Shown: positions 7,795 to 53,181 of the stretch, piece by piece | How the letters are laid out: each line of letters begins with the position of its first letter | Numbering within the stretch: position 1 is the stretch's first letter | Assembly: GCF_003918875.1 (NCBI RefSeq) | Contig: NW_025767309.1 | Coordinates: 558,001 to 622,000 of the forward strand | DNA length: 64,000 nucleotides | Source of the DNA: Haliotis rubra | Lineage: Eukaryota | Direction: 5' to 3' | Made by a program: the position numbers and the translations under genes | The notes under the pieces: model-generated | What the model was told of the DNA's origin: nothing | The model's database searches: none | The model's input: only the letters and a program-made list of their open reading frames with translations

Positions 7795-7870
7795 TCTCCA
7801 GTTTACTGCTTCCCTTGAGCTTATTGCAAGTCATCGTCCAGATCTTGTGTCTGTCTAGACCCAGCTTCAG

Positions 7871-7940
7871 CGTCAGTCAGAATAAATGAAGGTTGATCCC
7901 TAAACCTTGAAGGGGATTGACTGGAGATGGTTTGCTGGCG
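7871..7940 (+). promoter_or_regulatory. Type II SECIS element, GPX4-A 3'UTR
   Basis: ATGA at 7886-7889, helix GGTTGATCCC/GGGATTGACT, apical AAA at 7902-7904 with mini-stem CCT/AGG, 3' GA at 7924-7925, lower helix CGTCAG/CTGGCG. Confidence 0.92.
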
Positions 7941-10900
7941 TACAAACCACTCTGACTGGACACTGGTCAGTGCTGGACCTAGCTGGACATAACCATGGGT
8001 AGTGACTAGTTGTATGTGTAATAGTATCAGAGACACTTAACATTGTCTTAGCATAAATCAGATACTGCCTTGGCTTATTAGATGTATTACATCAAGACAA
8101 ACAATAAATGCAGTTTAATGATATTATAAATCACATTTTAAGTGCCCATTAATCGATAGTTCGGATACAGGAATTACTATGTGCTATTTGTCTTCTTTTG
8201 GACATGTTGTAGAACTTTTCTATTAAAGAAAGATGTTATGATGTTTATCAAATACAGACTGATCTCAGAAACTATGGCAATGTAACAATAAGTGTGATAA
8301 AAACAAATATACATGTATGTGTTATATGCAGTCGAAACTAAAGGGTTACTCAAGGGCAATAACTGTGATATTCTCCGCCAGCTGTGTAATATACCCATCT
8401 TATTCTTATTGTCTGCGATACTTTGCTGTGTTATTGGGAAGGTACGTAGATGTTTCTCAAGAAAATCTGTATTTCCTTGTGCATACATGGACACTCGAGC
8501 GTAATGTGCAGCCCCATTCTTGAGTATAAGTTTCAGTATGATGTCATACCATGCACAGTCAAAAGAATACTGCATTGCTTCAGATAAACGAACAAGAGAA
8601 AACAGACTTGATCATAGGCAGCAGTATTGGTAATATTCAGAAATATTCTTAACACTTTTCAGAATCAGATACTGTTGAAACAAATCTGGCATGCTTCAAT
8701 ACTAAGGTGTTGTCTTTGTTTTGGATTTTCAAAACTCATTGCATGTCCAATGCATACACCCTATCAACACAGCTATTTGTTGTGAAAAAAGTATGTGGTA
8801 CCCATTTTATGCATAGAGTAATAATTTAACAACTGATTAAGTTTATTCATTTTTATGGGAGAACGTGAGTGCTGCCCAGGGTCTGGTTGTTTATTGTTGT
8901 TTTTTACTTCAACAGAACGTCAAATGACACTGATATATGTATTGTTTGAGCGGAATCTAGAAGCATGTCTATTTTATACCACAATATTATATTTTATAAT
9001 TAACAATATATTCTTTTATACAGTATTAACAGTCTGATGTTAATTGTTGTTGATGCATTTGAAAGGAAACCTTGAGTCATGAATTGTTGATAGAGATCAG
9101 CAGACACAATACGTGGGCTGGATGCAGGACGGATCCATTACCTGCTTGGGATCTATATCCTGTTTGATGAAAGAAGGGTGGTTACAGTGCTCACATTTCT
9201 TTTGTCATCTGATTACTGACTAGTTTTTTTTATCACGTGCTGCATATTTTGGTGAACACACTGTGCTAGTGTTGACTTTGACAGTTTCCTTCTTGAAAGG
9301 TGGGGTAGCCTAATGGTTAAAGCGTTGGCCACCCCTGGGTACAATGTGTGAAGCCCATTTCTGGTGTCCCCTGCCGTGATGTTGCTGGAATATTGCTAAA
9401 AGCGGCGTAAAATCAAACTCAGTCAGTCAGTCAGTCCTTGAAAGGTCCATCCCTAAAAGTCATTGATAGTAGATATCTTTCTAAGGGATTCTTCTGAAGA
9501 TTTTGTTATCCTGTTATATTCATATTTAGGTTTGAGAAGTAATTTTGAAATTGTTATTATTTCAAATATCAAAATGAATATTTTTAGCTCACCTGACTAA
9601 TAGTCAAGTTCATCTTTCATCCTTTCAACAGAAACCAGTAGACCAATGAAGCTGAAATGTAACAGACATTTTCAACCACCTCAATTTGTTTCCAGATGTT
9701 TGAATCTTGTTTGGCACTCATATTGGAAAAGGTATTTATGACAATTTTTCTCATATTTGTTCAAAATGGATTAGTTTTGTGGCTCTAAATGTGTGTTTGT
9801 TTTTTCTGATGTGTTAATTTTTAAGTTTATATTTGACCATTGCACTTTGAAAATGGTCCAATATTGTTGCAAAATTCTTTTCCTCAGGAACTAATGGGCC
9901 AGTAAAACTCCATATGCTCATTCATTCACAATGATGACACCTGATCTTGTTCAGGAAATCTGTTTTTCAGTGTGGCGACCACAATGGCCATGTTGAAAAT
10001 TCTTGTATGGCCATTACACAGACATTTTTTTACAAAATATTATGAATTTGTTATGGGATGCAATAATTGCAGTAGTTGCTAAGGTGCTATGTGAGTGGAC
10101 ACAGGGTGACTGTTTGCCTGTTCCACCACACATAGTGGTTCTAACCTGACACAGATTATGTTTCAGACATTTATTTACATCACTGGTGCATGCTTAAAAA
10201 TTGTAAATTGGTTGTTATGTTTTAATGTTTATATACAGAGATGAAGTTATAGATATTTTGTCTCTGCATCCATATTTATTGTATCTAATATCTGTTTATA
10301 TACAAGGGTAAAGGTTTATTTTGTGTGATGTCACCAATATATTTGTACGGACATAATCATGGTGACAAAAGTAAATGTTATTCATGTGGTTCGTTTTTCA
10401 ATGTCAGATGACAACAATAAGAAATAAATTGAGTCTGGTGCTGCATAATTACTGGGGTAAATATTTCAACTTTATAAAGGCATCCTGTTCATCACTGGGC
10501 CAATGTAATTACTCACTGATTTACTGGACACTTAATAATGTAGTTATCTAACAAGATTGGTCCGGCAGAAAGGATATTTTGGCACAAACTCATTACAATC
10601 TTCTTGACATCTTTGAGACATTTAGAAGTTAAACAAATATAAATACATGATTCTTTGTCCTTTCATTCAAAACAAGATAAAAATGTGTTTGTGTGAAATA
10701 ATTAGTATGCTGCTGCCTTTTTGTGGTTTGTATTTATTTGCTGAGTTAGTTTTAGTGAAAGTTCTAGTCCTGTGATTTTTGTGAACTACAATTATTATAC
10801 TCAGATACATAGTCAGCGTCTTGTTGGTTGTTTAGTCACGTCTTTCAATATATTTATATTATCGGTATATATTTTTATGTATCTGAGCAACATTATATTC

Positions 10901-12546
10901 ATATTGTGTGTCATTTTTGCCAAGATATAGATGTTTTAGTATCCATGCTCACTTTATATACAGTTTGTTGTTGAAGTTGAAGGTACCAACATAAATACTT
11001 TGGGTTGCCCGAGGTTCAACACAGCCGCAAAGTGATTACTAAATATAAGGAATGTCCAGGAAGAAGCGTTAACTTTGATACAACCATAAGTTCAACTCCT
11101 CAAAATTTGACAAAGCAGTGTCTAACTGTATTTGTTTGTACAGGGTGCGGTGGTGTAGCCCAGTGGTTAAAGTGTTCACTCGTCACACTCAAGAACCGGG
11201 TTCGAATCCCCACATGGGTACAATGTGTGAAGCCCATTTCTGGTATGCCCTGATATTGCCATCCTCATAATCTTCTATGTTGACATAAATCTCCCACTAT
11301 ACCCGGATGCATCACGGAGGCGATTTTTATTACCTCCCTTGGCTACTCAGGTTTCTAGAAAGTTGAGCTACCAATCACAACCAGCTTTTTAAATTATCTA
11401 ACCGGCAGGTAATGGCAACACAATAATATATTGTTGCACAGGTACTCTGACTTTTCAATTTGTCTGTATGTTTTCCCAAATCTGAGACTACATCCACTGC
11501 AATCGCTATCTTTGTTGACACTGGCAAGCTCGGTTGTAACGAGGCTTATCTGATTGGCTACTACCATGGAGGTAATAAGATCATCCAGGGTATTGAGATT
11601 TATGTGATATTGGAGATGGAATATTGCTGGAATATTGCTAAAAGCAGCATAAAACTGAGCTCAGTCACTGTTCGTACAGTGTAACCTTTACTTTGTGGAA
11701 ACCAAGGTTAGCATAAATTTTCCAGGTTAACAACGAATCATGGGTACCCTGTGGGCATATCAAATTTTTCTATTGTGTTAGTTTGACATTTTGATGATAA
11801 TGGCATCATCAGAAGTATATTTTTGGTACACTTTAAAATGATTGTGAAAAATTATATCCATCTACCCAGAGATCTCAGTAAGACAATACCAGGGTAACTG
11901 ACAAGGAAGTGTAGTGTTCCTCAGAAATATGATTGTGTGTTATTTCTTCTATTTTGGATTTCTCCCAAAGTGTGATACTGGTGATAACCGCCTCAATTAT
12001 ACAGTGAATCTTATCTCCATAATGGTGCAAGAATCAACATTGAAAAGCCACTCTATGCAATAAACAAGAAACTGTTATCCATAAAGTCATATGTTTCATT
12101 ATTGACTCACCAACTTCTAGAAATTCAAACAATTCAATCTCCATTTTGTTTTGACATATAACCCACACCTATTCTTAGCTTTGCTTTGTTTTGGGAGTAA
12201 TGTCACCTGCTGCCTGTCTGTCATTGAATGCTTACCTCAGAATTTCTTTTGTGTGAGCTGGAAATCAAAATGTCTCTTCTGAATGTGGTTTCGTCAGAAA
12301 TCAAGAATAAATAATGTGGTCTCATCGGAACAAGGCCTTGACATATTTAAATGAAAGATATTGCAGCTCTAAGTTATATTTTAGCCAGAAAAGATGCTTC
12401 ATAAGTACTAAAATGGGAGTGGGTGAAGTGTCTTTATGCTACGAAAAGTTTGGGGTGTATTTGCAATGGCACGCAATAGTTGACATGAATATTTCCATGC
12501 TTCTTTCAATGAAGGACCACCATAATTTGATTGGAAGTCTTTTTTA

Positions 12547-12842
12547 GGCCAGACCAATTTTATTTCTTGTTTTACGGATTTTTGTCCTCAGGAAACCTAA
12601 AGGCAGGAGGGAAAAAAAATATTAAAAAAATACTAAAAGTATTGTACTTTTGGAAGTTTATGAAGTGTATATGGGGCAAAACACAATCTGAAAAAAAAAT
12701 AACTTGTAAATTTACATGTTTGACCAATAAAAAATTGGGATTTTATTTTTTGAGCGAGGAAAATTGACTTTCATTTTTTTTCATATTCTTGAAAAAATAT
12801 GACCGGCGAGTCCGTAAAACAAGAAATAAAATTGGTCTGGCC
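12547..12842. mobile_element. PIF/Harbinger (Tourist-like) MITE, copy 1
   Basis: ~30-bp TIR GGCCAGACCAATTTTATTTCTTGTTTTACGGA and 3-bp TTA TSD. Confidence 0.85.
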
Positions 12843-13229
12843 TTAGCACTATATTCAAACAAGCCTCAAAACGGTATTATCTAGGTTGTGGTGTTCTTTG
12901 CTTAGGAGTGTTCCACTGCGTCACTTTACCTGCTTTTATCAAATTGTTATCATTTTATATACAGAGTTTAGATGTACCAGTACCTGAATTCTTCAACATC
13001 ATGAAAAGATTTGTATAGTTTCTTAATTTGCAGAAAATAAACATATACTGAAAATAGTCTTCTCAAGCCTTTGTTTTTTATAGTTATTGAATGGGTTCAT
13101 ACAGCGACAAATTATGTTTCTTTATTGTAATGAGTGGACAAGACTGCAATGTGATGATGTATTAGAAAAATGGATTTATGATATGTCATCATATGTTTAC
13201 TTGTACAAGAATGTAAGCTACACTGATTA

Positions 13230-14020
13230 CTCTGTCAGAATTGACTTGACATGGTGCTGTTGAGAAGAATCTTTTCTACACTGACTTGACATAGAGCCTT
13301 GAGGACAGGAATCTTGTCTTGACTGTCAGAATACAAGAATCTTGTCAACAATGTCAGAATTGACTCATGGCAGCCTTTGCAGACATGAATCTTGTCTTCT
13401 CTGTCAGAATTGACTAGACATGGTGCCTTAAAGACAAGAATCTTGTCAACAATGTCAGAATTGACTCATGGCAGCCTTTGCAGACATGAATCTTGTCTTC
13501 TCTGTCAGAATTGACTAGACATGGTGCCTTAAAGACAAGAATCTTGTCAACAATGTTGCCTTAAAGACAAGAATCCTTGTCAACAATGTCAGAATTGACT
13601 CATGGCAGCCTTTGCAGACATGAATCTTGTCTTCTCTGTCAGAATTGACTAGACATGGTGCCTTAAAGACAAGAATCTCTTGTCAGCCTTTGCAGACATG
13701 AGTCTGTCAGAAATTGACTAGACATGGTGCCCTTGCAAGACATGAATCTTGTCTTCTTTGCAGACATGAATCTTGTCTTCTCTGTTGGATTTGACTAGAC
13801 ATAGTGCCTTAAAGACAAGAATCTTGTCAACAATGTCAGAATTGACTCATGGGAGCCTTTGCAGACATGAATCTTGTCTTCTCTGTCAGAATTGACTAGA
13901 CATGGTGCCTTAAAGACGAGAATCCTGTCAACAATGTCAGAATTGACTCGACATGGAGCCTTGAGGACAAGAATCTTTTCTACATTGTCAGAATTGAGTA
14001 AATGTGGTGCCTTGAGGATG
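13230..14020 (+). repeat. Minisatellite of ~50-51-bp monomers in ~101-bp dimers
   Basis: Alternating tgtcagaattgactagacatggtgccttaaagacaagaatcttgtcaacaa and tgtcagaattgactcatggcagcctttgcagacatgaatcttgtcttctc units. Confidence 0.9.
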
Positions 14021-14259
14021 AGTATGTTGTTTCATTCCACCCTTTGTGACAGCTGGTGATATATATCTGCTTCATGATTAAGTATGTGAATATAGAGATA
14101 TGATATAGTAAGAGGGATGGCAGGATATAGCCTGCACACCTTACACTTCAGTGTTCACAAGGGTACGTTGTCTCTCTTGGCATGGGTTAGTGAATTGGGG
14201 TTCATGCTACTTCTGACAATATTCCACCTTCATGACTTAACGTGCCAGGAAAGCCTGAA

Positions 14260-14505
14260 GTGAGTGAGTGAGTTTAGTTTTACACCACACTCAGCAATAT
14301 TCCAGCTATATGATGGCAGTCTGTAAATAATCGAGTTTGGACCAGACAATCCAGTGATCAACAGCATGAGCATCATTATACGCAATTGGGATACGATGAG
14401 ATGTGTCAACCAAGTCAGCGAGCCTGACCACCCGATCCCGTTAGTCGTCTCTTACGACACGTATGGATTAATGAAGATCAATTCTAACCCAGATCTTCAC
14501 GGGTC
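14260..14505 (-). mobile_element. SINE-like retroposon family 2 (no tRNA head, structured 5' end, (CTCA)n tail), full-length copy
   Basis: TSD aaagcctgaag. Other copies at ~3020-3150, 35940-36170(+), 40097-40336, 45490-45675, 50480-50866 and 54920-55040. Confidence 0.8.
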
Positions 14506-15962
14506 AAAGCCTGAAGTGATGCAGGTCACAGGTGTGAATAATTTGAGCACAGGTATGGTGCTTACAAACCTGGAAACATCATTGGAGAGGATGGTGATTC
14601 CATCCCCAAATCATGGGGAGTTACCTTGCTATAAGAAGTTTATATTCATGGATTCCCTGCCTAGATGTGACAAGAATATTGTAAAAAGCAGGCCAAATCA
14701 TAAACTTCACAGTAAAATTTACAAAATAAATAATTTTATAACATCTTTTGGTACCTATATGAAGCAATCAAAATCAATTAACATAAGTAACTAGTGTTAC
14801 CTACAGTTCAACTCAACCCACACACTGGACCATCCTTACACCCACATCAGTAGTCTGTCGTACAGACCCTGAAACAAATATATCCATGAAAGCCTATGCA
14901 ATTCTAGTATACATGGCAAGTCTAGATTTCCACAGTTTCAGGCTGAAAATGAAGAAAGTCTCTGGGCTCCTTTTCATTATATTTTGTGATGATTTTTTAT
15001 GAACAGTAACATATGTTCATTTCAGAGACAAGATGTTAGTCTACCACATCAGCTGACCAGAAATCTACAACTGTATTGAGTTGATTATTGAGTTGATAGG
15101 GAGGACTTCATCCCACCAGATATTGTATGAGCAAAGTACCAGTCTTCCAACAGTATCTCAATCACAAATGATGGCTTTGGTGTTATATTTAAGGCTGATG
15201 TTTCACACATGTTTCTGCTGATAATTGATTATCTTCCTGGAATAATCCATAAAGGTTTTTGGCCTGTGGCTTGCGTGACCATACAGCCCAAAATTCATTT
15301 ACATTGCACATTCAATGCAATATGCTGCAAACACTTGCCCTGGTCTCAGGTCACAGAAAGGCCGAACATCCATCAACTTGAGTGAGTTTGGTTTTACGCG
15401 GCTTTTAGCAATATTCCAGCAATATCATGGCAGGGGACACCAGAAATGGGCTTCACCCATGTGGGGAATCGAACCCGAGTACTCAGCATGATGAGCGAAC
15501 ACTTTAACCACTAGGCTACCCCCACCCCCAGCCCCCATCAACATGAACAATTGATGATTTAGACAACAAAGATAGGTTTAATCATCACTGTAACCAGATT
15601 TTTTTGTCTACAGGAAGATCAAATTTCAAATATTATCACGAACAGGATGCACATTCACCCACCAGCACTATGCGACACCTATATTTAGGAGAGGCTTGAC
15701 TGACCTGACAGTCACATAATAGAGCCTGTTGTCACTGACTGTCAGTTACCACACATAAGGATAGGCTTTAACCAGATCAAATAAACACATACCATACATA
15801 ATAGCATTGACAGATCAACTATCATACTGAAGTAGGCCAACTCATGGATGACAGGGACAGTTAGGATAGGATAAAGTTAAGTTCACAATTACCATTGAAG
15901 TTGATAAGACTTCAGGGACCTGTCAGGGAAGAAGTTGGCATTAGGATTTTATATTTTGCTGA

Positions 15963-16251
15963 GGCCAGACCAATTTTATTTCTTGTTTTACAGAGTTTTG
16001 TCCTCTGAAAACCTAAAGGCAAAAAGGGAAAAGGGAAAAAAAAAAAAAAATACTAAAAGTATTTTACTTTTGGCAATCTATGGAGCAAAACACAATCTAA
16101 AAAAATCCTTTCTTGTAAATTTACATGTTTGACCAATAAAACATTACGATTTTATTTTTGAAGTGGGGAAAATCAACTTTTTTTTTTCTTCTTATTCTTG
16201 AAAAAATACAACCGGCGGATCCGCAAAACAAGAAATAAAATTGGTCTGGCC
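15963..16251. mobile_element. PIF/Harbinger MITE, copy 2
   Basis: Same TIRs as 12547-12842, TGA TSD. Confidence 0.85.
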
Positions 16252-18539
16252 TGACTACCCATTTTATTTTCATTTTTTCATGACCACCTCCCCAACACAC
16301 ACACACACACTCCTTAAAATAACTGACCATTCCCTAACTAACATTTAACTTAAATAAATAATTTATAACCTCTGGAAAAATAGGTATAGAGCTGTCACGT
16401 TTTCATGGCCTACTAAACCTTTAATTGTGATAAATGTGTATGTTCTCAAAAAGATATGCTTAAAAGAATATGGTAAAAAATCCTAGTTTTGTAATCTTTT
16501 CAGCTCACTGAAAAACATGAGTTGTAACTATACATTTTTACTTTTGCATTGGGATCTACAATCTTTTAAAGTAATGTCTGAGGATAGAAAGATGGAACTA
16601 CCATATACCCCAGAATAAAAATTAACACAAATGGAATGTTCAACATGGTTCCTATGGTGTTAGGAGACTCCATCACTATCAGTGACAATGAAGTAATTAT
16701 GACTGAAACATATAAACATTATGATTCATGTATCACCATCATGTATCACAATGTGATAAGCAACGATACAAAGCAAGAGGCTACTCCAAATGCCATCAGT
16801 ATATGGTGTCTGTCTACTTAAAGTCTGAAAATACATAATTTTGATATGAACAAATAACTCCATATAAATTGAGGAGCTCTAATGAGCTCGGAGTTTCAGA
16901 AGCTATGGAAATCTATACTTGTTTCATTTATGGCTATCACATTGCAAAAAGGGTTTGGGTGAAGGGAAAATAATGTGGTTCAGGGATTGAAGCAGACTAG
17001 GCAACTCAAGAGATTGGTTTTGAAATTCATAGATATGGCACAGTTGGGAAGGTTCTAGAAATGGGTTTCTTGTCACTTTAGGGGACGGCTTCACTCATTG
17101 TGCCCATGTGGGCATCGAACTCAGGTCTTTGGTGTGACAAGTGAATGCTCTAACCACAAGGCTACCCCACTGCCCTGATGCACATAAAAATTTGTTCCAA
17201 AAGGTTGTGTTATTTCTAGGGGTGACAATTGGGGTAGAAAACAACTATTGTGATAGCGATAGTCTATTGCGACCAATTCTCCTTGAATTGTCTCATTTGA
17301 AGTCATTTCCCAAATGAATAGAAAGTTTATATGAAATAAAAATAAGTCGAAGTAGTTTCGGTCTCTTTTAGCAACTGACAAGAAACTTGAAACCCAGTTC
17401 AGGTAAACAGTTAAAACATAAACTCAATTGAGCTGCAAGTCTGCACCCAAACATCCTGTATTTTTCGCTGAGCATTTATCAACGGAAATCAATTACTAAA
17501 CTATCGACAGTCACACAAACTATCCATAGGTTTTCGTTTCTACCATGATTAATTGCTATCAGAGACTCAACAATTGCAATCCATTGGTAGTACGATGCAT
17601 TGTTACAGCACTAGTTATTTCATTTGAGGCATAAATCTGATTATTTACAGATGCAGTAATTGATGATTAAACTGCCAATTACAACCTTTCACCTGCCTAG
17701 TCTGTTCCCACGTTTAAGTTCAGAACATGACATTCTTTTGCCACATACAGTTATAAACAAGAATTGATGTAGCCTTCAGGCGGTGGGGTGGCCTAGTGGT
17801 TAAAGCATTTCGCTCATCACGCTGATGACCCAGGTTTGATTCCCCACATGGGTACAATGTGTGAAGCGCATTTCTGGTGTCTTGCACCATGATATTGCTG
17901 GAATATTGCTAAAAGCAGCATAAAATCCAACTCACTCACTCACCTGGTGACTGTGGACGGCTCTAAAATAACATCTCCTAAATACCTAATATTTTTTCAT
18001 TCTGTATATGAGGTCTCTTTAGCGTTGGAGAGATCATTTGTAAAAATCAATTTAGGGATTAATTTATAGTTTGAAAAGTAAATAATAGTAATGAAATCCC
18101 TGGCAGCATGTTTCTGATTTTAGTAAGTCAACAGAACAAAAATAATTTTAGTTTGTTCACCATCACATGATAAACATATATAATCTAAGTGAAGCAACTT
18201 TTGTCTCCAGATTTGTCGGTCATGCTGTGTATGTTTACCACAAAATGATCTCACTAAATGGGACTACAGTGTATGTTATGTCAATACAATTTACTGAACT
18301 AGCTGCCTGGAGTATCCATATGAATTCATTTGTAATACCAAGCCTTGGTGACAGATAATCCATATCATATCACCGCTGGTATTTGTCCCATCACTCATAT
18401 TTGATATTCAGTGTTGCATCTGCTAGTGTGGCAGTGGTGCATTGTTATCTGATGACCGTGGAAGTAATGTATAAGCCAGATTATGTATGTGCCAAATGTT
18501 TTAAAGTTCTCATCACATATAACATAGCCACTAAACAGT

Positions 18540-18652
18540 AGTGAGTGAGTGAGTGAGTGAGTGAGTGAGTGAGTGAGTGAGTGAGTGAGTGAGTGATAGA
18601 GTGTGTGAGTGATAGAGTGAGTGAGTGAGTGGAGTGAGTGAGTGAGTGAGTT
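18540..18652. repeat. (GAGT)n microsatellite expanded from a SINE tail
   Basis: Read directly; abuts a minus-strand family-1 SINE at ~18653-18800. Confidence 0.95.
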
Positions 18653-21600
18653 AGTATGGTTTATGCCCTTTTTAGCAATATTCCAGCAATATCATGGCAG
18701 GGGACACCAGAAATTGGCTTCACACATTGCACCCATGTGGGGAATCGAACCCGGGCTTTCGGCATGACGAGCAAACTCTTTAACCACCAGGCTGCCCCAC
18801 AAAACAGCATATCAAATGTAATTACATTTTAATCAACAAAAAACACACAAACAAATAATATATTCTTCAAACCCCATAAGCCCTATCTGCACATTGTATA
18901 CTGTAGAACTCATGGCTGCTTGCTCTTGAAAAATAACTGTCTTTATGCATGATGTGGTCACCATAGTCAAAGGAAGGAAATACAAAAATATATATTTTTT
19001 ACCATTTTCCACAACCACAAATTCAGATTTACAAATGCTGATTTCTTTGGCTTTGTGCATGGTATGAGTGTGAATGAGGGAGTTTGGTTTGTCGCCGCTT
19101 ATAGCAATATTCTAGCAATATCACAGAGGGGGACACCAGAAATTGGATTCAAACACTGTACCCATTATTGCTCAAACCCTACCCCACATTTCGACTTGTA
19201 ATGTATATATCATGGACATTAAACATGCTGTTGTGTCATCATCTCAATATCCACCAATTAAATTTTACATGGTAACTTTTCATTGTTATATTTTCAAATT
19301 TAAAAACAATGCACAATTTCTTTATGTGGCTGGTATACATCAAAAGACAGTAATTTGGCGGCAGTAGGGTAGCCTAGTGGTTAAAGCATTTACTCGTCAC
19401 ACCGAAGCCCTAGGTTCAATTCCCCACATGGGTACAATGTGTGAAGAGCATTTCTGGTGTCCCCTGGAGAGATATTGCTGGACTATTGCCAAAAGCGTAG
19501 TAAAACCCAACTCACTCACTCATTTGCTTACAATGCATTTCTTACTAGTGGTCATGTAAAATGGTATGGTAATATAACAAGAAGTCTGCCTATATTGTTA
19601 CAAGTTGCAGAATAACAGTCTAGTGACCATATGTAACCCTGACAGCCATCTGGCTGGAATATTGCTGAGTGAGGCATTTAACAGCAAAAGCCAGTTGGAA
19701 ACTGCTAAAAAAATTAGGGATCATGAATATTCTGGGTGTTATTTCTATATGAAGACCAAATTTTTGTATATGTGTATGGTATGTAAATATATTTCATGAT
19801 TCCAAGCCCTTTTTGTTCAACATAAGAGTTTTCACCACTTCTGTTTCAAAGAGAAGGGCAACATTATTCACTTTGTTTATAGTTTAATGACAGAGTCAAC
19901 AATATTTCAGTATCAGTCAACCAGTAAATAGTCTGGACCAGACAAATCCTGCACAGGTTCGATGTAATGAGGAATGCACATATCGGTCTCGCCAGTAGAC
20001 TATGACATGCAAGCTCTGAAGTTACCGGGCATAATCAATCAATCTAATTCTACTGCCTCTGACAACATATATTAGTGTGCTGTAAACCTATGATATGTAT
20101 CTTGTGGCACATTGTACGAGAGCAGATTATACTACGGGAATTTCTATATGCCTAATGATACGTCATGCTGCTCATCAAATTCACGGATAAGTCATTCAAA
20201 GTCACTTCGTCTCCTTGTTTACAGTTATTCCATTCAATAACTACCCTAATTACATCCACACAGATGAGACAGGTTTCACACATGACATTCCCCATAAAAA
20301 ACTTCATCTTGGCTTGAACTGAACAGGAGGTCATGGAATTATAAAGTCTTTGTAACACCAATTCTCACGATATGATTTTACCGAATCTATAGTAGCAATT
20401 GTGGAACATGCATTATCTATGCATGCAGACTACTGAAAATATATCAGGCGGCCCATATATACAAGGCAGGATGAATGTGTCATTAGATAATGAATCATCA
20501 TGTAGTTTATTGAATGCAGTTATGACATTTATACCTAGACGTGTATTGTCCGACAGGGAAATAATTCACATACCAACTTGTCCTGTCAGTATGATCAATG
20601 AAACTCATTCACTTGCAATGAATTCTGTAAATAGTGGCGGTAATATTTCCTTGTCACTTCCTGGTCTCCACACTCATTATGAATGACAGGGAAATGTTAT
20701 GCATATCATTTTGTTGTGAGGTTCTTCAGTTAGACATGTTGGAGATACTGTCAACACAATAATAAATGTCTCTCAAAAACCATGGAAAAAAAAATATAAT
20801 GAAAGTGAGTGAGTATGGTTTTACACCGCTTTTAGCAATATTCCGGCAATATGACAGCAGGGGGACACCAGAAATGGGCTTCACACAAGTTCTAATGAAA
20901 ACAATATAAATCTGATCAATCCGAGTTTATAACAATCCATTACAGCCTTGCCAAATGTCATAAACAATTCATTTAATGAATAAAACCTTCACAGCCTTTC
21001 TATGATTTATAAAAAATGTAGTTGTGTTTCATATAAAGTGGTGTAAATGTCACGTTACTGAAAATAACATCATACTTGGTCATTTCGTCTGATCAATGTT
21101 TTACCATAACAAAATCATTGACAAAACCCATACCTAGTAACAGGAGGCAGTGGGACACGCCCTGAAGGACGGGTGGTGTAATAACTCGGATAACGCGTCA
21201 ATACTGGGTGTGACCACCATTTGTGCTAATAAAGCATGGCAGTGGCAGTGCATTGGAGACACCGGATGATTGACACAGTCTGGGAGATGTTGGTCCAAAT
21301 GTCAACCAAAGATTGCCCAACTGAATAGTGTCAGACATGTTGTATGGAGGAGAGGTTGGGGGGGGGGGCAGCCGAGCAATGTTATGGTGCCATAAAAAGT
21401 CAGTTACAGAAAGTGCCACATGTTGGCAGGCATATATTTCCCTGCTACAACCGCAGAAGAGGATGGAACATGATCAGATAATCTTGGACAATTTTGTTTC
21501 TGTCATTTCATACCCACACTCTTGAAACTGACTTCACTTTGTAACACAGGTGTCCCTTATTCATTCTCTTGGGTCCTGTAGACGACCTTGCACGACCTCT

Positions 21601-22231
21601 CAAGATGAAACCTATCTGAACATGGTACCGTCCCTGTCTTATCCTATCATTTTCAGATGCTGTCCGCACCATGTGGATGTTGTAGCGCCAATAAATGTAT
21701 CACTGGAATACTGCTGAATGAGGCATTAAACACAAGACATCAATTGCTTTTAGTATCAGAAACAAACAGAACTGACTTTCACTTTATTTATTTGGAGTAT
21801 GAGCCTTCTAAGAAGAGCACCCAGCTGTATGAACGTTGGAGTTTGGATGTGCATTTCATCGTTATGATCAGTCAAAGTGACAATATTCTTGATAGTACAT
21901 GCAATTAAACTAACTGCCTTATCCCAATTTATACTAAAATATTAAGTTCAAGATAAAAGCTAGGTTATGAATGATCACTATAGTGATCTTATAGTACTCA
22001 GAACACAATAGTTCTCAGAAAATACAGAATGCAGTCTTGTGAAAAAAAATATGTGAATTTCAAAATGTGTCGTTCATACACTTAAGAACTTCAGATTTCA
22101 TGTGATGACTTCTGGTCCAATTGAAAAGCAGTATTTCATGTAAACTTCACATTAAAAATTCTTTCATTTTGGAAGGGGTCCAATGTTCATTCGCTGCATG
22201 TACTTCCAAACTCAATGGTAGACTTTTTCTA

Positions 22232-23496
22232 CCAGGGGTGGATGAACAGTTCTGAGTCTAACTATGATGGACTGCATTGATAGAGTTGGTTGCAAGTCAT
22301 CTTTCAAAATGATCCCCTCTGAAGTCCACACATTTCACCCAACAACACAAACATGCCTGGATCCCAATGGTGTAGATGTCCTCTTGGTAGTGGATACATC
22401 CTTCATGGCGGAACTGATGTAATATCACTTGCATAATTCTTAACAGGACATTCTTTGATCGAGTGAGGGAAGAGGAGGAAATCTGACGGTGCCCACATCT
22501 TGTGAATGTGGATGATGTCAATAAATTTAAACAACAGACGCATTGCAGACTGAGGTGCAAGTACAGTCTTTAATTAAGAGACGACACATCTTTATTTTTC
22601 CCCCACAATTGTGTCTGATATTCCTATTTAGCGGGCTTTTCAGACCAGCCATTTGTGGTCTGACCTTTCCCATGGTAGTCCTTCAGCAGGATTACTGTGG
22701 AATCTCAGAAAGGCAAAGCCGTATCACATTGCCAAACATGCTTTGTTGTCTTCTTCTTTGTTGGAGATGTTATATGACGGCACAGGTTTGACTGTTGTTT
22801 AACTGTTTTGTCGGTTGTTCTGGTGAACGACCCAATCCTGATCCATGGTTACAAAACAGTCCAACTGCAGCCTGGTCTGTTCAAAACAACATGAATTCTC
22901 ACCAGAAATGGAGAAATCTGGAGCGTTTCTGATCAGGAGTTTGAAGCATCTGAACTTTCTGTCATGCCTAGTTTATTACTGAGAATGTTGGAAACTCTCT
23001 CTTGAGAGATACCTACTTTATTGGCTATGCGGCGTGCACTGATTCCTGGATCATTCAAAATAATACCACATATTTTATCAACATTTTCCTTAGTGGTCAC
23101 AGTTGTGGGTCTTCCTGATCTTGGATCATCTTGGAGACTCTCTTTTCCCCTCCTGAACTCCGCTGCCCACCTTTTAACAGTGGCAAAGGAAGGAGCATCC
23201 TCTCCTAACGTTGACACCATGTCGGCATGGATGGCTGTTGGGGTGAGCCCTTTCATGTGGAGATACTTGATGACAGCTCGGTTGCCTATTTTGTCCATTT
23301 TCATCAACAGAGAATGCCTGGTGACTTTGGTGCCAGCAGAAACCGCTGCCTGGTTTTGTAGCTGGTTCCAGTGCAGTTTGTAAGCACTTGGTGAACAAGT
23401 TGTCTTATTGAGTAGGCGAAGGCTTTTATGTAATACATGCAAACCGTAGCTTCTGATTTCATTTATTTAGGCTCAGAACTTTTCAGCCACCCCACG
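22232..23496 (-). mobile_element. Mariner element, ~1.27 kb, catalytic domain decayed
   Basis: TA-flanked 29-bp TIRs at 22232-22260 and 23468-23496 (5 mismatches). Remnants TPDQKRSR, FVTMDQDW, ILLKDYHGKGQT and WVKCVDFRGDHFER are interrupted by stops and frameshifts. Confidence 0.9.
22933..23298 (-). CDS. Mariner paired-like (bipartite HTH) DNA-binding-domain-only protein, 121 aa (GVQW3-like), possibly domesticated
   Basis: Uninterrupted MDKIGNRAVIKYLHMKGLTPTAIHADM...PSFATVKRWAAEFRRGKESLQDDPRSGRP...ISARRIANKVGISQERVSNIL. Stops where the WVP linker should be. Confidence 0.6.
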   Translation of the reverse strand: MDKIGNRAVIKYLHMKGLTPTAIHADMVSTLGEDAPSFATVKRWAAEFRRGKESLQDDPRSGRPTTVTTKENVDKICGIILNDPGISARRIANKVGISQERVSNILSNKLGMTESSDASNS

Positions 23497-23639
23497 TATT
23501 TCTTTGTAGTGAATATACGATAGTGCTTAGTCATCATATTATAAGAACTATAAGGAGATGGAGAGCTGGTACATTTTTCACTCTCTCTAATACACGTATG
23601 TATGGAAATGTACACGCTATATAGTGTGACAGTAGTAAG

Positions 23640-47488: not shown

Positions 47489-48777
47489 CAGTACAACCAG
47501 AAATTATTGAGAATTTAAAGATTGTAAATTTTTAATTTTTTTCACTCATTACTCACGTATTAAATGTGAATATTAGCAGAACATAACTCCAGATTCAAAG
47601 ACAGGTGAACAGTTAGTATTTTGTCAAGTCACCATGGGCAGCAATGCAGGCTTCAATGCGGCGGGGCATACTACTATCAAAGAAGTTAGAATGTCATGGT
47701 CAATGCAGTCCCACCTCTTCTTTCATTTCAGCAATATTTGTCAGATTTTTCTTATTGACACTTTCCTTCATAAGACCCCAAACATTTTCTATTGGATTTA
47801 GGTCAGGGCTATAGCTTGGCCAATCTAATAATGTCATATTTTGGATCCGAAACCAGGCCTGTGAATGCTTGGAACGATGTTTTGGGTCTTTGTCCTGCTG
47901 GAAAATCCAAAAATGTCCATAGAACACGTGAGCAGATGGAAGTAAATGTCCCTCGAGAATATCTGTGTACCACTCACTGTTCATATTCCCTTCAAATACA
48001 CAGAGGGGCGTTGCCCCTTACACAGATATGCCACCCCACACGTTTAATTTCAGACTGTACTTTGGGCGCTGATACAAAGGTTTTTCAGTTTGTTTGGTCC
48101 AGAATTTCAGTGTATTAGGAAACATCCACACAGAACTTTCATCTGAGAAAATCACATTGTCCCAGTTAAAATTTCTATGCTGTAAGCACCAGTTCAACCT
48201 TGGCTCCTTTTGTTCAGGTTTCATGATCGGTGATGGAATTGCTCGACTTTTCTGCCAACCCATTGCATGCAGCTCAGTTCTAATTGTCTCCTTACAGACA
48301 GCCACAGTTCCTCTATCAATCGTATCCAGCCTTAAGTTTTCTAAACCGCTTCGTTTGTTTTTAGAAACAAGAATACCAAGCGGCCTCCTGTCACCGACAG
48401 TCAATTTTCTGGGCCTACCTGCGCCTCCCTGGTGCTCAATGCCATATCCATTTGCAATATTTTTCAAAACACGATAAACAGTGGACAAATGGATGCCTGT
48501 TCTACTTGAAATCACTTTAGCTGATCTGATGTCCTTGTTATAATACTCTATAAAATCAAATTCCTCTTCTCTAAATCATCCATACTGAGGATCACTGAAA
48601 ATGTCGTCTGCTAGCAAGTAAACAAAGGGGGATAACTCTTCACAAACTAATGAAAAAGGATTAACGGAGTTGTCTCTCTTGAATGAAACCAAGCACTTGA
48701 TAGCTGGTCAAGGTTGTTTATACTAGAAATCCAATTAAACATATTCCTAAAATTCTCAATAATTTCTGGTCATACTA
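47489..48777 (-). mobile_element. Tc1 (DD34E) transposon, full length, frameshifted transposase
   Basis: TA-flanked TIRs CAGTACAACCAGAAATTATTGAGAATTT. ORFs 48018-48515 (GRPRK, FSDES) and 47700-47984 (FQQD...SPDLNPIEN, 34 aa D-E spacing). Confidence 0.93.
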
Positions 48778-48899
48778 TATATGTGTAGACCACTATTAAC
48801 CAGACAACCTTCAGGGCTAAATCTTCTTGCCGTCTGCTGGCTCATCATCCCCATCTTGATAACTCTCATTCTGTCTCTCACTCAGTGAGGCAGTGTTGA

Positions 48900-49131
48900 C
48901 TACTCATCTGTCTCCCCATCCATCCTTGTCACCGAGACACCCCTTGTCTCGGAGAATGTTCGACTTAAAGACACATTGTCTGCCAGGCTTGCTGCGCTCT
49001 GCCAACTCCGGAAACAGATCATTCCCTTGTCTTGAACGTCCTTGCGTCCTCTCATTGTGATGACCTCCCCGTCTGGCCGCAACACAACAAGCTTGGGGAT
49101 AGCATTGATGTTGAACTTGTTGGCAAGCTGC
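48900..49131 (-). CDS. NXNL2: Nucleoredoxin-like protein, last coding exon (total 199 aa)
   Basis: (E)QLANKFNINAIPKLVVLRPDGEVITMRGRKDVQDKGMICFRSW... matches the NXNL2 C-terminus (AIPKLV...GEVIT.KGRK....G..CF..W). Confidence 0.88.
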
Positions 49132-49884
49132 CTGCAAATAATTAAATGATTAAAGATAATTGCAAACTATTTAGACAAAATAATTATGTTTTCACTTTTT
49201 CTTTGATTTTCCTGTGCTTCTGCAGTTTGGCTCAGTGAGATTGGTTTAATGCTGCTGTGTCCACTCTTCCAGCTTTATCGCAGTGTGTTACCTAAGTGTG
49301 GGAGGAAAACCCAAGGTGATGAAGCCCTTGATGTTTACCATCTAAGTGAGAACCATGTATGTGTGTGACGTGCTGACAAATCCAAGAAACTTGATCAAGT
49401 TGAACCATGATTCAAACCAGTGATCATCGAGCATGATGTGTATCACTGTGGTGAAACCCACATGCAAGGGTATGGTGCTGATGAACCTAAAAAAACCATG
49501 ATCACAGTTTTTGGGAATAGCTCAAGGACTGCAACTATGCCCCAAGGAATGCAACTCTGCAGAGGAAGCTGTAGTGCCTTTGATGACTGGGCCCCTGTAT
49601 CCCCGACTTGAGACAATAACGCAGAGTAGTGATGCTCTTACGCATGTTGCAAAAGACGCATTGACTCTGGACATAATCCACAATCAGCACTGACCCTTGG
49701 GTACCTTTTTTATTCAAGTCATTGTATCCAATTGCATATATATTGATGCGCATGAAGTCAATCACTGGATTGTCTCAAGTATATACACTGCCATCATGCT
49801 GGACTATTGCTGTGTTCAACAACAAACAATAACCAATTTCTATATACAAAGTATATACACAAAGTATATAAAAACATAACCTAC

Positions 49885-50252
49885 TCTCTTAGGGGGTCGT
49901 CATAGGGCACTGCAAGCCAGTCACCGTGACAGTTTAAGAAGTATTCTTTCATCATCTCCTTGGTTCTGTCAAAGCTGATGAAGATAACTTGAAGAGGGGC
50001 ATTCCTGTTCCTGAGATCCTCGTACATCTGCTTGAGGAGGGGTGTAAACTTCTGACATGGGGGGCACCAGGAAGCGGAGAAGTAGACAGCGGTCACTCTC
50101 TCCTTTGTCACCTCTTCTCCACTGACCAGGGCATAACTGGCCCGGTCAGGAACATACTTATCAGTATTGAAGTGTTCTTTTGTCAACAGCCAGCAGTCTT
50201 TGAAAGGGTTTGGAGGAGGTTGTGGTGTTGATTCAGGTTTGTCAGACTCCAT
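49885..50252 (-). CDS. NXNL2: Nucleoredoxin-like protein (NXNL2/RdCVF2L-like), first coding exon
   Basis: MESDKPES...AVYFSASWCPPCQKFTPLL...VIFISFDR...HGDWLAVPYDDPLR. Acceptor at 50262-50261, phase-2 donor GA|gtaggt. Confidence 0.88.
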
Positions 50253-53042
50253 TGCCTTCACTGAGGAACAGAAACACTGGTGGTTGTATTGCATATAAAA
50301 TTTCAAACCGATCAATTTTCATTTTTAAGGAATGAACCCATCTGCTTTTGAATTAAATTAAAATTGTATTGAAGGGGTTTTTTTTAATATATTTTTTCTT
50401 CTTTGACAAATTACTGTTTTGTTACACATGAGTATATGATATAAAAGCACAGCTGATTAAGCTTCAAATACAATGGTTACTTAGTGCTGCATTCAGCAAT
50501 ATTCCAGCTATTTGGCGGCAGTCTGTAAATAGTGGAGGGCGGTGGGGTAGCCTGGTGGTTAAAGCGTTCGCTCGTCATGCTGAAAACCCGGGTTCGATTC
50601 CCCACATGGGTACTATGTGTGAAGCTTATTTCTGGTGTCCCCTGCCGAGATTTTACTGGAATATTGCTAAAAGCGGTGTAAAACTAAACTCACTCACTCA
50701 CTCACTCACTGTAAATAGTGGAGACAATCCACCATCAATCTACGCAATTGGGATACGATGACATGTGTCAGCCAAGCCAATGAGCCTGACCACTGGATCC
50801 CGTTAGTTGCCTTTTACTACAAGCATAGGTTGCTGAAGACCAATTCTAATGCGGATCTTCACAGGTACTGTAAATATAATGAGATCTCTATTTGTGTATG
50901 TAGGAATGATAATGTCAACATTCTGAACTAAATGATTATTCACATGAGGAAGTTGATGCATGCAAAAGTCGGGACCATATTTATATTCTAACACTTCCAT
51001 GGGAGATATAATATAGAGCTGGATATTCTTGTTTAATTATCTCCATTTTGGATATATAGGTATTTTTTCAAATATTGATAGCTTGTCTCATTGTTTTTCT
51101 AATAATTTGTCGACATAAATATTATCCGCCAACCTACGAAAACAGGATCATTCATAAAAGATAATATTTCTAACAAATGTGAAAATTGCCTGCATTTATG
51201 TTCATACTAATTTGGTTTGTTTCAAATTACAATATATAAAAAATACAACACACGTATCTGTTGAGACCCTCACTCGCACATCCCGCAGCCTTCGCGATAG
51301 AAATCATCCGCTAAGGAAGTAATGAAATACTTCAACATCTAATACAACATCTATTTGAGAGGCTAAGCAGTGTACTATGTATCCGATCCCTTTAGATACT
51401 AGTTAACAAATGATGGTGATACTGTGATCCAGGGTCAACGCTAACATCATGTAATCCTCAAAATGTTAAGTGATAATTCTCTAAACAGTAACTAAAATGG
51501 TCGTATTTATTTCAAAGACAAGGTTATTGTAAGTATGTGGATTTCAGCCCTACAACTACACGCACACACAAGGAAAAAGCGTAAAGTCAATGCAAGAAAA
51601 TATTGATAATATTTACCTTAGCAACAATGCTTCTTATCACAACATTGGAGTTATGTCCCTTGTGAGGGAAACAACGTATGGGTTTATAAGAATCGCCGCA
51701 TCTTTGATCCAGAACAACCCTGGATTTATTACATTTATTGACATTTCCATGTAGATTCTTAATCTTGTCAAGCTAAATGAAAGTGAAGTGATTATTCATA
51801 AAGTTGTGTGTGTTTTTTCTTTACCCACTTCTAGAAGGAAATTTAAAACAGATACACTTATAAATACGTCATACCTGAATGGCAACGGGGCCACTAATAT
51901 TTCGAGGTACATCATAACATCTTATTTTTGAAAATTACTTTAAATAAAAACTTAAGCCGATAGCTAAATTTATAATGTGGTTAAATCACTCTTACGCAGC
52001 GCCATCCAGAGTACGAACAGTTAATAGGAGTGTATAAGGAGACAAGTGCTGAGAACATGACTCAATCTTATTTCCTTTCTAAATCGTGGTATGTGTGATA
52101 ATTTCTTTTCAATGAGAACTTTTGCATACGTGAATCATTAACGGTGACAATCACCATGAAAGTGATTCCCGGTCAATTTTCTTTTACGTCAACTCGGCAT
52201 GAGGCAATTAGAGACTGGTGTCTCGCTGTTCCGGGCACGGAAGAGGCATTGTTTTGAAGTATAATCATTCATGTTTTTTACCTGACGATTAAAGATTTCC
52301 CCTTATGAGCAGACCGTCACGAACCTATGAGCTAGAAGTTCCGACAGCCGACATGATTTTAATATGAAATCCACGTTCATGTTCACGGGGCACCAATGCA
52401 TACAATCTTCAGCCCATGGGAGGCTTTTTAGATTCTTTTCGATAATTTAACATGAATAGATTTTTAAAAAATGTTCATGATGATAAGGTTTTACAATCAC
52501 CTGAAGTATTGATTCTCGGGTTTGCTGTAAGTTTACATACTCCGTTATTCTCAAGACGTAGAATGTAACACAAACAGAATGGGTTGAAATATCTTGAGCC
52601 AAGCTAAGATTCAACAAAACTAGAAATAATGGTTGTCGAAATCATTACAACAGTCTCGCCTATGTCAAAATAGGTAGTAAGTTTGCTCTCATTATAGTGT
52701 ACATTAGGCTGTCTTCTCGGTCGTTCTTCAGCAAAATTTAATTGTAAATCTGAATTAGAGTTTGAATTTACCACATAATATCAACATATATATAAATAAT
52801 TTCAAATGACCCTGACAAAAAGTATTTCTCAATCCCTGTGTATCCTCTATATAGACAATATGTTTGACATAAATGCAAGGTCATTGTAAGCAGATTTCAC
52901 TAATTATTTCACTTTATTGCTCTTTACAAAGTCATGATATATGCTACACAATTAGTCAAAACAGACACCAAATGTTTTTCTCTACTGTTGGCTGAGATTG
53001 GGGAGGAGATAGACGTACAACACGCACAATGAATGGACTTAC

Positions 53043-53181
53043 CTGCGTAGTCATGACGTAAACAATGCGTGACGTCATAATATTATTTTTGACGTCACAT
53101 AGCGGAAGTGTGACGAGACGGTTTCCATGTTGCAACGGGACGGTTTGGCTATCGGTTTCGCTCAGAATATCTATTCATGCA
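53043..53181. promoter_or_regulatory. Compact bidirectional promoter / overlapping first exons of NXNL2-like and the uncharacterised gene
   Basis: TGACGTCA at 53070 and 53090, TGACGTAA at 53054, GTAAACA at 53058, CGGAAGTG at 53103. Consensus minus-strand donor CAG|GTAAGT at 53043/53042. Confidence 0.55.

What the first reader, a model, noticed from the sequence alone, without database searches (positions are those of the whole stretch)
48900..50252. Invertebrate NXNL gene with the RdCVF-style intron-retention stop
Seen: the only coding intron is phase 2 after ...WLAVPYDDPLR. Unspliced, GA|G TAG gives Glu-stop at once (123-aa truncated thioredoxin fold); spliced, it gives a 199-aa WCPPC enzyme. 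Known: vertebrate NXNL1 and NXNL2 produce the trophic factors RdCVF and RdCVF2 by retaining an intron at this position with an immediate stop, while the spliced form is the enzyme. Inference: the bifunctional design may operate in this mollusc-like animal, which keeps a full dithiol where mammalian NXNL2 has CxxS. Caveat: phase-2 GTRR donors often create stops by chance.
Basis: partly seen in the sequence, partly recalled or inferred. Interest (0 to 1): 0.7.

Follow-up and report, generated by a model that had tools for sequence, protein, structure and literature searches.

The report
Abalone NXNL2 gene, ordinary intron stop
This is the already annotated abalone nucleoredoxin-like 2 thioredoxin gene; the stop codon just inside its intron is what a normal splice-donor sequence gives in this reading phase, and the RNA data available show only the spliced enzyme form.

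Summary
A minus-strand gene (CDS 50252-49885 and 49131-48900) encodes a 199-aa WCPPC tryparedoxin-fold thioredoxin. Its 753-nt intron is phase 2 after ...DDPLR. Left unspliced, it reads GAG TAG, giving a 123-aa product.

The protein is 100% identical to Haliotis rubra RefSeq 'nucleoredoxin-like protein 2'. The intron sits at the same codon and phase as in a fish NXNL2 gene, a starfish and six other molluscs.

The immediate stop is not a special signal. In phase 2, any GTAA/GTAG/GTGA donor gives a stop. The stop codon differs between species (TAG, TAA, TGA). About 71% of 35 family members have it, including all eight annotated genomes checked. The exceptions have GTAY or GTGG donors, among them the nearest non-Haliotis relative found.

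Assembled transcripts from four runs of two abalone species all carry the exact 753-nt splice, and none covers the intron. Depth is low (3-13) and tissues are unknown, so tissue-specific retention is not excluded.

Intron retention giving an RdCVF-like product is already published for scallop, Hydra and amphioxus NXNL genes, although the scallop gene studied there is a different locus from this gene's scallop counterpart.

Verdict: a real gene in a known family, with an unproven and undistinctive bifunctional reading.

The parts
53043..53075 (-). 3' end of an upstream non-coding 5' exon (donor CAG|GTAAGT at 53043/53042). The exon extends further upstream by an unknown length.
   Evidence: The loose end of the X5 transcript contig matches 53046-53075 with 2 mismatches. 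The donor was read.
51254..51307 (-). Alternative first coding exon (MISIAKAAGCASEGLNRY, donor GTGTGT) of the 218-aa RefSeq H. rubra model. It splices to the acceptor at 50256|50255.
   Evidence: tblastn of P0123 gives a 100% match. Sequence read. The X1 and X2 contigs end at 50255.
49885..50252 (-). Coding exon A: Met1 to Arg122 plus 2 nt. It holds the WCPPC active site (50069-50055) and the HGDW motif.
49881..49886 (-). GAG TAG: the split Glu codon and the in-frame stop formed by donor positions +2 to +4 (GA|GTAGGT).
49132..49884 (-). Phase-2 intron of 753 nt (GTAGGT...TTTGCAG). It contains a repeat fragment at about 49736-49775 and an AATAAA at about 49713-49708.
   Evidence: The joint that skips 753 nt is present in all four runs laid, with no locus-specific intron contig. 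Sequence read.
48900..49131 (-). Coding exon B: the third base of Glu123, Gln124 to Glu199, and the stop. It encodes the cis-Pro (Pro135, 49097-49095), the last strands and helix of the fold, the CF..W motif and an acidic tail.
   Evidence: (Thioredoxin_8 profile positions 72-94).
48753..48899 (-). 3' UTR as far as transcript contigs follow it. At about 48780 it runs into a repeat or transposon.
   Evidence: X3 record 21 and X5 record 28, with loose ends at 48776-48782.

Best explanation
This is the abalone (Haliotis rubra-identical) ortholog of the bilaterian nucleoredoxin-like (NXNL2-type) gene. It is spliced to give a 199-aa (or 218-aa) single-domain, tryparedoxin-fold dithiol reductase. 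Cys63 and Cys66 of WCPPC lie in exon A. The cis-Pro135 loop and the C-terminal part of the fold lie in exon B, so only the spliced product can be an enzyme. The phase-2 intron after ...PY-DDPLR is an old feature of the family, shared with vertebrate NXNL2, a starfish and other molluscs. The stop that follows it at once is an automatic by-product. In phase 2 the first intronic codon is made of donor positions +2 to +4 (T-R-R), which is TAA, TAG or TGA for GTAA, GTAG and GTGA donors. Shown here: the gene structure, the splicing, the orthology, the shared intron position, and the frequency and variability of the stop across the family. Inferred: the enzyme activity, and that the stop is not under selection of its own in abalone.
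For: The structure and the stop are. Pfam Thioredoxin_8 hits at 2.3e-19, with exon A on profile positions 2-69 and exon B on 72-94. The best solved relatives are 16-kDa thioredoxin-related proteins and tryparedoxins, and the alignment shows the 2-residue HG insertion before the Trp. The protein is 100% identical to H. rubra XP_046545570.1 'nucleoredoxin-like protein 2', and orthologs are annotated in four Haliotis species. In the tree, molluscs form one clade (95/95) inside a starred group (95/93) with vertebrate NXNL2 and the ambulacrarians, apart from NXN-type proteins. The same intron position and phase, with an immediate stop but different stop codons, is seen in these species: TAG in two Haliotis; TAA in Gigantopelta, Pecten, Babylonia, Mercenaria, Patiria and L002; TGA in Patella and fish NXNL2. 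Exceptions have GTAY or GTGG donors. L001, 67% identical and the nearest non-Haliotis relative, has GTACGT and nine more sense codons before a stop. Among unspliced ORF calls, 10 of 27 read through, always starting Y-V or W-V/A. Overall about 25 of 35 (71%) have the immediate stop. My estimate of what a metazoan donor profile predicts is about 0.7. PMC2911113 states that GTGAGT and GTAAGT always create a stop in phase-2 introns. Transcript contigs of four runs (two species) all carry the exact splice, and none covers the intron. No 123-aa product turned up in the protein collection search.
Against: Contigs drop rare variants, depth was only 3-13 and tissues are unknown, so moderate or tissue-restricted retention would be missed. 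The homologous intron is reported as retained to give functional or candidate RdCVF proteins in mouse NXNL1 and NXNL2, lamprey, amphioxus, scallop and Hydra, so retention may be a family trait. Because the intron is the last one, a retained transcript would have no exon junction downstream of its stop and should escape junction-dependent nonsense-mediated decay (inference). The 0.7 baseline is my estimate from the general metazoan donor profile, not a measurement on abalone introns. All eight annotated genomes with this intron have the stop.
Confidence: 0.7

Rival explanations
1. RdCVF-like bifunctional gene. In some abalone cell types (for example ciliary photoreceptors, tentacles or gonad) the intron is retained in a stable polyadenylated mRNA. 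The 123-aa truncated, enzymatically dead thioredoxin fragment is made and acts as an extracellular ligand of a basigin/neuroplastin-like receptor. The spliced form is the reductase.
For: The intron has the same position and phase and the same one-codon-plus-stop layout as fish NXNL2 and mouse RdCVF-S (PMC2064930). Retention of the corresponding intron, with protein or binding evidence, is reported for Hydra and scallop, and partial retention for amphioxus (bioRxiv 10.1101/2022.01.06.475223 and PMC9396122). The truncation point removes the cis-Pro loop and the C-terminal 'cap', as in RdCVF. It is the last intron, so a retained mRNA should not be a junction-dependent decay target (inference). 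The donor has a non-consensus exon side (AGA|GT).
Against: No intron-containing contig was found in four transcript assemblies of two species, and no 123-aa product is on record. The stop is expected by chance and is absent in the closest non-Haliotis relative and in several fish NXNL2-like ORF calls. The scallop gene with experimental support (XP_021363738.1) is a different locus from the scallop ortholog of this gene (XP_021345285.1). Nothing in the intron sets it apart: it aligns with H. asinina only as neighbouring species' introns do, and it holds a repeat fragment.
Confidence: 0.2
2. Retention occurs at low level, but only as splicing noise or as an unproductive way to lower enzyme output. 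The 123-aa fragment is unstable and has no function of its own.
For: A weak exon side of the donor is forced by the conserved Glu/Gln/Lys codon (GA|G, CA|G, AA|G) across the family. Expression is low (depth 3-13). A thioredoxin fold cut before the cis-Pro loop is unlikely to fold on its own (inference).
Against: No retained form has been observed at all so far. Truncated RdCVF proteins are stable and active in vertebrates according to the literature.
Confidence: 0.1

Closest known systems
Vertebrate NXNL2 (RdCVF2 / RdCVF2L)
   Same: Single tryparedoxin-like domain, HGDWLA.P motif and C-terminal G..CF..W motif. The phase-2 intron lies at the identical codon with a stop right after it (Sinocyclocheilus locus). 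Fish NXNL2 also keeps WCPPC. RefSeq names the abalone protein 'nucleoredoxin-like protein 2'.
   Different: The abalone protein has a roughly 30-aa N-terminal extension and an acidic C-terminal tail. No retained transcript was seen here, whereas mouse RdCVF2-S is a documented mRNA (PMC2064930).
Scallop NXNL (XP_021363738.1) of Ait-Ali et al. 2022, plus Hydra NXNLa/b and amphioxus NXNLa
   Same: Invertebrate NXNL genes in which an intron with an in-frame stop is retained to give an RdCVF-like truncated protein beside the spliced thioredoxin.
   Different: It is a different locus. The scallop counterpart of the abalone gene in my tree is XP_021345285.1 (251 aa), not the 141-aa protein studied. 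I could not fetch XP_021363738.1 to place it. No experiment exists for abalone.
16-kDa thioredoxin-related proteins (Carcinoscorpius 2LUS, Wuchereria 4FYU) and tryparedoxins
   Same: These are the best solved-structure matches (1.3e-22 and 6.7e-19). They share the WCPPC site and the fold, and for the 16-kDa proteins the HGDW motif as well.
   Different: Tryparedoxins lack the 2-residue insertion before the Trp (MPW rather than HGDW). None of these is known for an intron-retention isoform.
Nucleoredoxin (NXN)
   Same: Thioredoxin_8 domain with WCPPC.
   Different: NXN-type proteins are multi-domain and carry EMPWLA rather than HGDWLA. They fall outside the NXNL group in the tree.

Membership tests
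NXNL (nucleoredoxin-like, RdCVF gene family) | Single tryparedoxin-like thioredoxin domain (Pfam Thioredoxin_8) | tested here: met
   (2.3e-19 for exon A; exon B completes the profile).
NXNL (nucleoredoxin-like, RdCVF gene family) | Two-residue insertion before the conserved Trp, which separates RdCVF-type proteins from tryparedoxins (Chalmel 2007, 'insertion 3') | tested here: met
   The alignment shows chGDw against KM--PW of tryparedoxin. The motif table shows the same split.
NXNL (nucleoredoxin-like, RdCVF gene family) | Groups with vertebrate NXNL proteins rather than NXN-type in a phylogeny | tested here: met
   a 95/93 group holds the molluscs, the ambulacrarians (echinoderms and hemichordates), vertebrate NXNL2 and Nematostella. 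NXNL1 and the published scallop protein were not available to include.
NXNL (nucleoredoxin-like, RdCVF gene family) | Phase-2 intron after the ...P[FYW].D..[RK] codon, followed by an in-frame stop | tested here: met
   The feature is real, but the stop is not discriminating.
RdCVF-type bifunctional gene (works like) | A stable mRNA that retains the intron | tested here: inconclusive
   One search shows only the spliced joint in four runs, from contigs at depth 3-13 and unknown tissues. One search found no 123-aa product on record.
RdCVF-type bifunctional gene (works like) | Truncated protein is made, exported and binds a basigin/neuroplastin-type receptor | not testable with these tools
   This needs proteomics and binding assays.
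Active dithiol thioredoxin | CxxC active site plus a cis-Pro loop | tested here: met
   WCPPC lies at 50069-50055 and IPKL (Pro135) at 49097-49095. Activity itself was not tested.

The most novel reading that the evidence does not exclude
This second molluscan NXNL-type locus (the NXNL2-like one, not the scallop gene already studied) also makes an RdCVF-like 123-aa ligand by tissue-specific retention of its last intron in a gastropod. That would make the enzyme/ligand dual use an ancestral property of the whole bilaterian NXNL lineage rather than of single genes.
Probability: 0.15. Interest if true: 0.5.

Novelty: new member of a known kind. Interest (0 to 1): 0.25.

Why it matters
If retention were shown, abalone would give a gastropod model for the origin of RdCVF signalling, with a gene that still has a full dithiol site. 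As it stands, the useful result is a caution. For this family, conservation of the stop codon after exon 1 cannot be used as evidence for a short isoform. The intron is phase 2, so the donor consensus itself supplies the stop. This applies to the vertebrate argument as well as to invertebrates.

Tried and rejected
(1) I looked for intron-retaining transcripts with the single reads call. Only spliced contigs were found. The one high-depth intronic block (49736-49775) has loose ends on both sides and is a repeat, not this locus.

(2) I looked for a recorded 123-aa product in the protein collection and found none.

(3) I considered intronic polyadenylation. An AATAAA at about 49713-49708 is also present in H. 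asinina, but no contig ends there, and one such hexamer in a 753-nt AT-rich intron is expected by chance.

(4) I aligned the intron with H. asinina to look for special conservation. It is partly alignable with large indels and shows nothing beyond what close species show.

(5) I tried to tie the gene to the published scallop NXNL. The accession differs, and I had no way to fetch XP_021363738.1, so orthology to the studied gene remains open.

(6) The exact lookup of the Mizuhopecten protein on contigs failed, so Pecten was used instead.

(7) The spliced 199-aa protein could not be passed by reference. Searches used the exon pieces and the identical H. rubra protein.

(8) I did not measure a baseline for immediate stops at phase-2 introns in abalone, because no genome-wide intron set was at hand.

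Full report
**What is there**

The gene lies on the minus strand.
- Exon A starts at an ATG at 50252 and runs to 49885, which is 122 codons plus the two bases GA.
- The donor is GA|GTAGGT. The intron is 49884-49132 (753 nt) and ends TTTGCAG.
- Exon B runs from 49131 to the TAG at 48902-48900.
- Spliced, the product has 199 aa, with WCPPC at 50069-50055 and the cis-Pro (IPKL, Pro135) at 49097-49095.
- Unspliced, the frame reads GAG TAG at 49886-49881, giving 123 aa ending DDPLRE.

**Transcript evidence**

I laid four runs on 48560-50500. The tool only guesses that they are RNA, but their spliced contigs fit that. Three runs are of one organism and one is of a second, more divergent organism.
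- Each run has a contig with a joint that skips exactly 753 nt, with CT..AC ends on the + strand, that is GT..AG on the gene's strand.
- No contig covers the intron. The one exception is a short high-depth block at 49736-49775 with loose ends on both sides, which is a dispersed repeat.
- Depth on the exons is only 3-13. Contigs drop rare variants and the tissues are unknown. This shows that the spliced form is the main form, but it does not exclude tissue-restricted retention.

The same call and follow-ups define the 5' end.
- One transcript joins the acceptor at 50261|50260 to a non-coding exon ending CAG|GTAAGT at 53043.
- The RefSeq-type 218-aa form uses a small coding exon at 51307-51254 joined to 50255.

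**Identity**

- Exon A hits Pfam Thioredoxin_8 (2.3e-19, profile positions 2-69). Exon B completes the profile (positions 72-94).
- The best solved structures are the 16-kDa thioredoxin-related proteins of horseshoe crab and Wuchereria, followed by tryparedoxins.
- Relative to tryparedoxin, the protein has the two-residue insertion before the conserved Trp (HGDW against MPW). Chalmel et al. 2007 give this insertion as a mark of RdCVF-type proteins.
- The protein is 100% identical to Haliotis rubra XP_046545570.1, 'nucleoredoxin-like protein 2'. Orthologs are annotated in H. asinina, H. cracherodii and H. rufescens. The window is therefore blacklip abalone or a very close relative, and the gene is already annotated.
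- In a maximum-likelihood tree, the mollusc proteins form one clade (95/95) with the gastropods together (94/92). This clade lies inside a group (95/93) with echinoderm, hemichordate and vertebrate NXNL2 proteins and Nematostella, apart from NXN-type proteins.

**The intron is old and shared**

I mapped annotated proteins back on their genomic loci. All of the following have a phase-2 intron after the codon that aligns with Arg122.

| Species or locus | Donor | Unspliced reading |
|---|---|---|
| H. asinina | GTAGGT | E* |
| Gigantopelta aegis | GTAAGT | E* |
| Patella caerulea | GTGAGT | E* |
| Babylonia areolata | GTAAGA | E* |
| Pecten maximus | GTAAGT | E* |
| Mercenaria mercenaria | GTAAGT | E* |
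| Patiria miniata (starfish) | GTAAAA | R* |
| Sinocyclocheilus (fish) NXNL2 | GTGAGT | Q* |
| L002 (unnamed Logan contig) | GTAAGT | E* |

The Nematostella gene model has no intron there. For mouse, Chalmel et al. state that RdCVF-S is exon 1 extended by one codon and a TGA.

**Why the stop says little**

In a phase-2 intron, the first codon wholly inside the intron is made of donor positions +2 to +4. With a GTRR donor that codon is TAA, TAG or TGA, except for GTGG. PMC2911113 makes the same point for GTGAGT and GTAAGT.

The data fit this reading.
- The stop codon itself is not conserved. It is TAG, TAA or TGA depending on the species' donor variant.
- Where the donor is GTAY or GTGG, the stop is gone.
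- The nearest non-Haliotis relative I found (L001, assembly GCA_900175075.1, 67% identical) has GA|GTACGT and reads on for nine codons.
- Among 27 ORF calls that run from exon A into the unspliced intron, 17 stop at once. The other 10 read through, and each begins Y-V or W-V/A. Several of these are fish NXNL2-like sequences.
- Together with the eight annotated genomes, that is about 25 of 35 (71%).
- My estimate from the usual metazoan donor profile is about 0.7 (+3 A about 60% and G about 35%; +4 A about 70% and G about 10%). This comes from general knowledge and was not measured here.
- The exon side of the donor is forced to end in A by the conserved Glu/Gln/Lys codon. This should favour a near-consensus intron side, and hence a stop (inference).

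Chalmel et al. also list vertebrate exceptions: chicken and zebrafish RdCVF, and pufferfish RdCVFb.

**What is already known**

- Ait-Ali et al. (bioRxiv 10.1101/2022.01.06.475223) and the review PMC9396122 report retention of an intron with an in-frame stop in the NXNL genes of Hydra, the scallop Mizuhopecten yessoensis and amphioxus. Both the RdCVF and RdCVFL mRNAs are reported in scallop ciliary photoreceptors, gill, gonad and muscle.
- The idea of an invertebrate, indeed molluscan, RdCVF-style gene is therefore published.
- The scallop accession they used (XP_021363738.1, 141 aa) is not the scallop protein that groups with the abalone gene (XP_021345285.1, 251 aa). Scallops therefore seem to have at least two NXNL-type loci, although the review speaks of a unique gene. 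Which locus matches the abalone gene functionally is open.

**Conclusion**

- The most likely reading (about 0.7) is an ordinary, spliced NXNL2-type dithiol reductase gene whose intronic stop is a by-product of the donor sequence.
- An RdCVF-like retained isoform (about 0.2) remains possible. The family has this habit, and the intron is the last one, so a retained mRNA should escape junction-dependent decay (inference). Nothing in the sequence or the available RNA data speaks for it specifically.
- The decisive data are raw poly(A)+ or long-read RNA by tissue and a Lys-C proteomic search, neither of which I could run.

Noticed in passing
window 53049-53097: Two perfect CRE/ATF palindromes (TGACGTCA at 53070 and 53090) and a near copy (TTACGTCA, about 53049-53056) lie within 50 bp at the 3' end of the gene's upstream non-coding exon. 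The whole 64-kb window has only four perfect copies, against 0.85 expected.
   Followed up: partly
window 48018-48780: A Tc1/mariner-type element lies on the minus strand. It has an ORF with an HTH_Tnp_Tc3_2 domain at 48018-48515 and a highly expressed repeat at 48561-48780. It begins about 120 nt after the gene's stop codon. The second abalone species' transcript diverges from the window exactly at 48781, so the element may be an insertion into the 3' UTR in this species.
   Followed up: partly
window 50520-50710: A tRNA-like SINE head (GGGGTAGCCTGGTGGTTAAAGCG...GGTTCGATTCCCCA) is followed by a (CACT)n run, between the gene's two alternative 5' exons and its ATG exon. ARAGORN calls no tRNA here. 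It probably belongs to the abalone tRNA-SINE family noted elsewhere in this window.
   Followed up: partly
loci L006 (Pecten maximus) and P0045 (Mizuhopecten XP_021345285.1): Scallops carry an NXNL2-like gene of 250-251 aa with three coding exons and the same phase-2 intron and stop. It is distinct from the 141-aa XP_021363738.1 that the literature calls the unique scallop NXNL gene.
   Followed up: partly
window about 7800-23500 (earlier notes, not checked by me): Earlier first-stage notes place GPX4 paralogs in the same window. In trypanosomatids, GPX-type peroxidases take electrons from tryparedoxin-fold proteins, so a redox gene neighbourhood may be worth a look.
   Followed up: no
locus L008 (Nematostella DS469714.1): The Nematostella NXNL-like gene model has no intron at the bilaterian position. 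Its only intron is phase 1, 12 codons before the stop. Many cnidarian-like ORF calls also run continuously through the site.
   Followed up: partly
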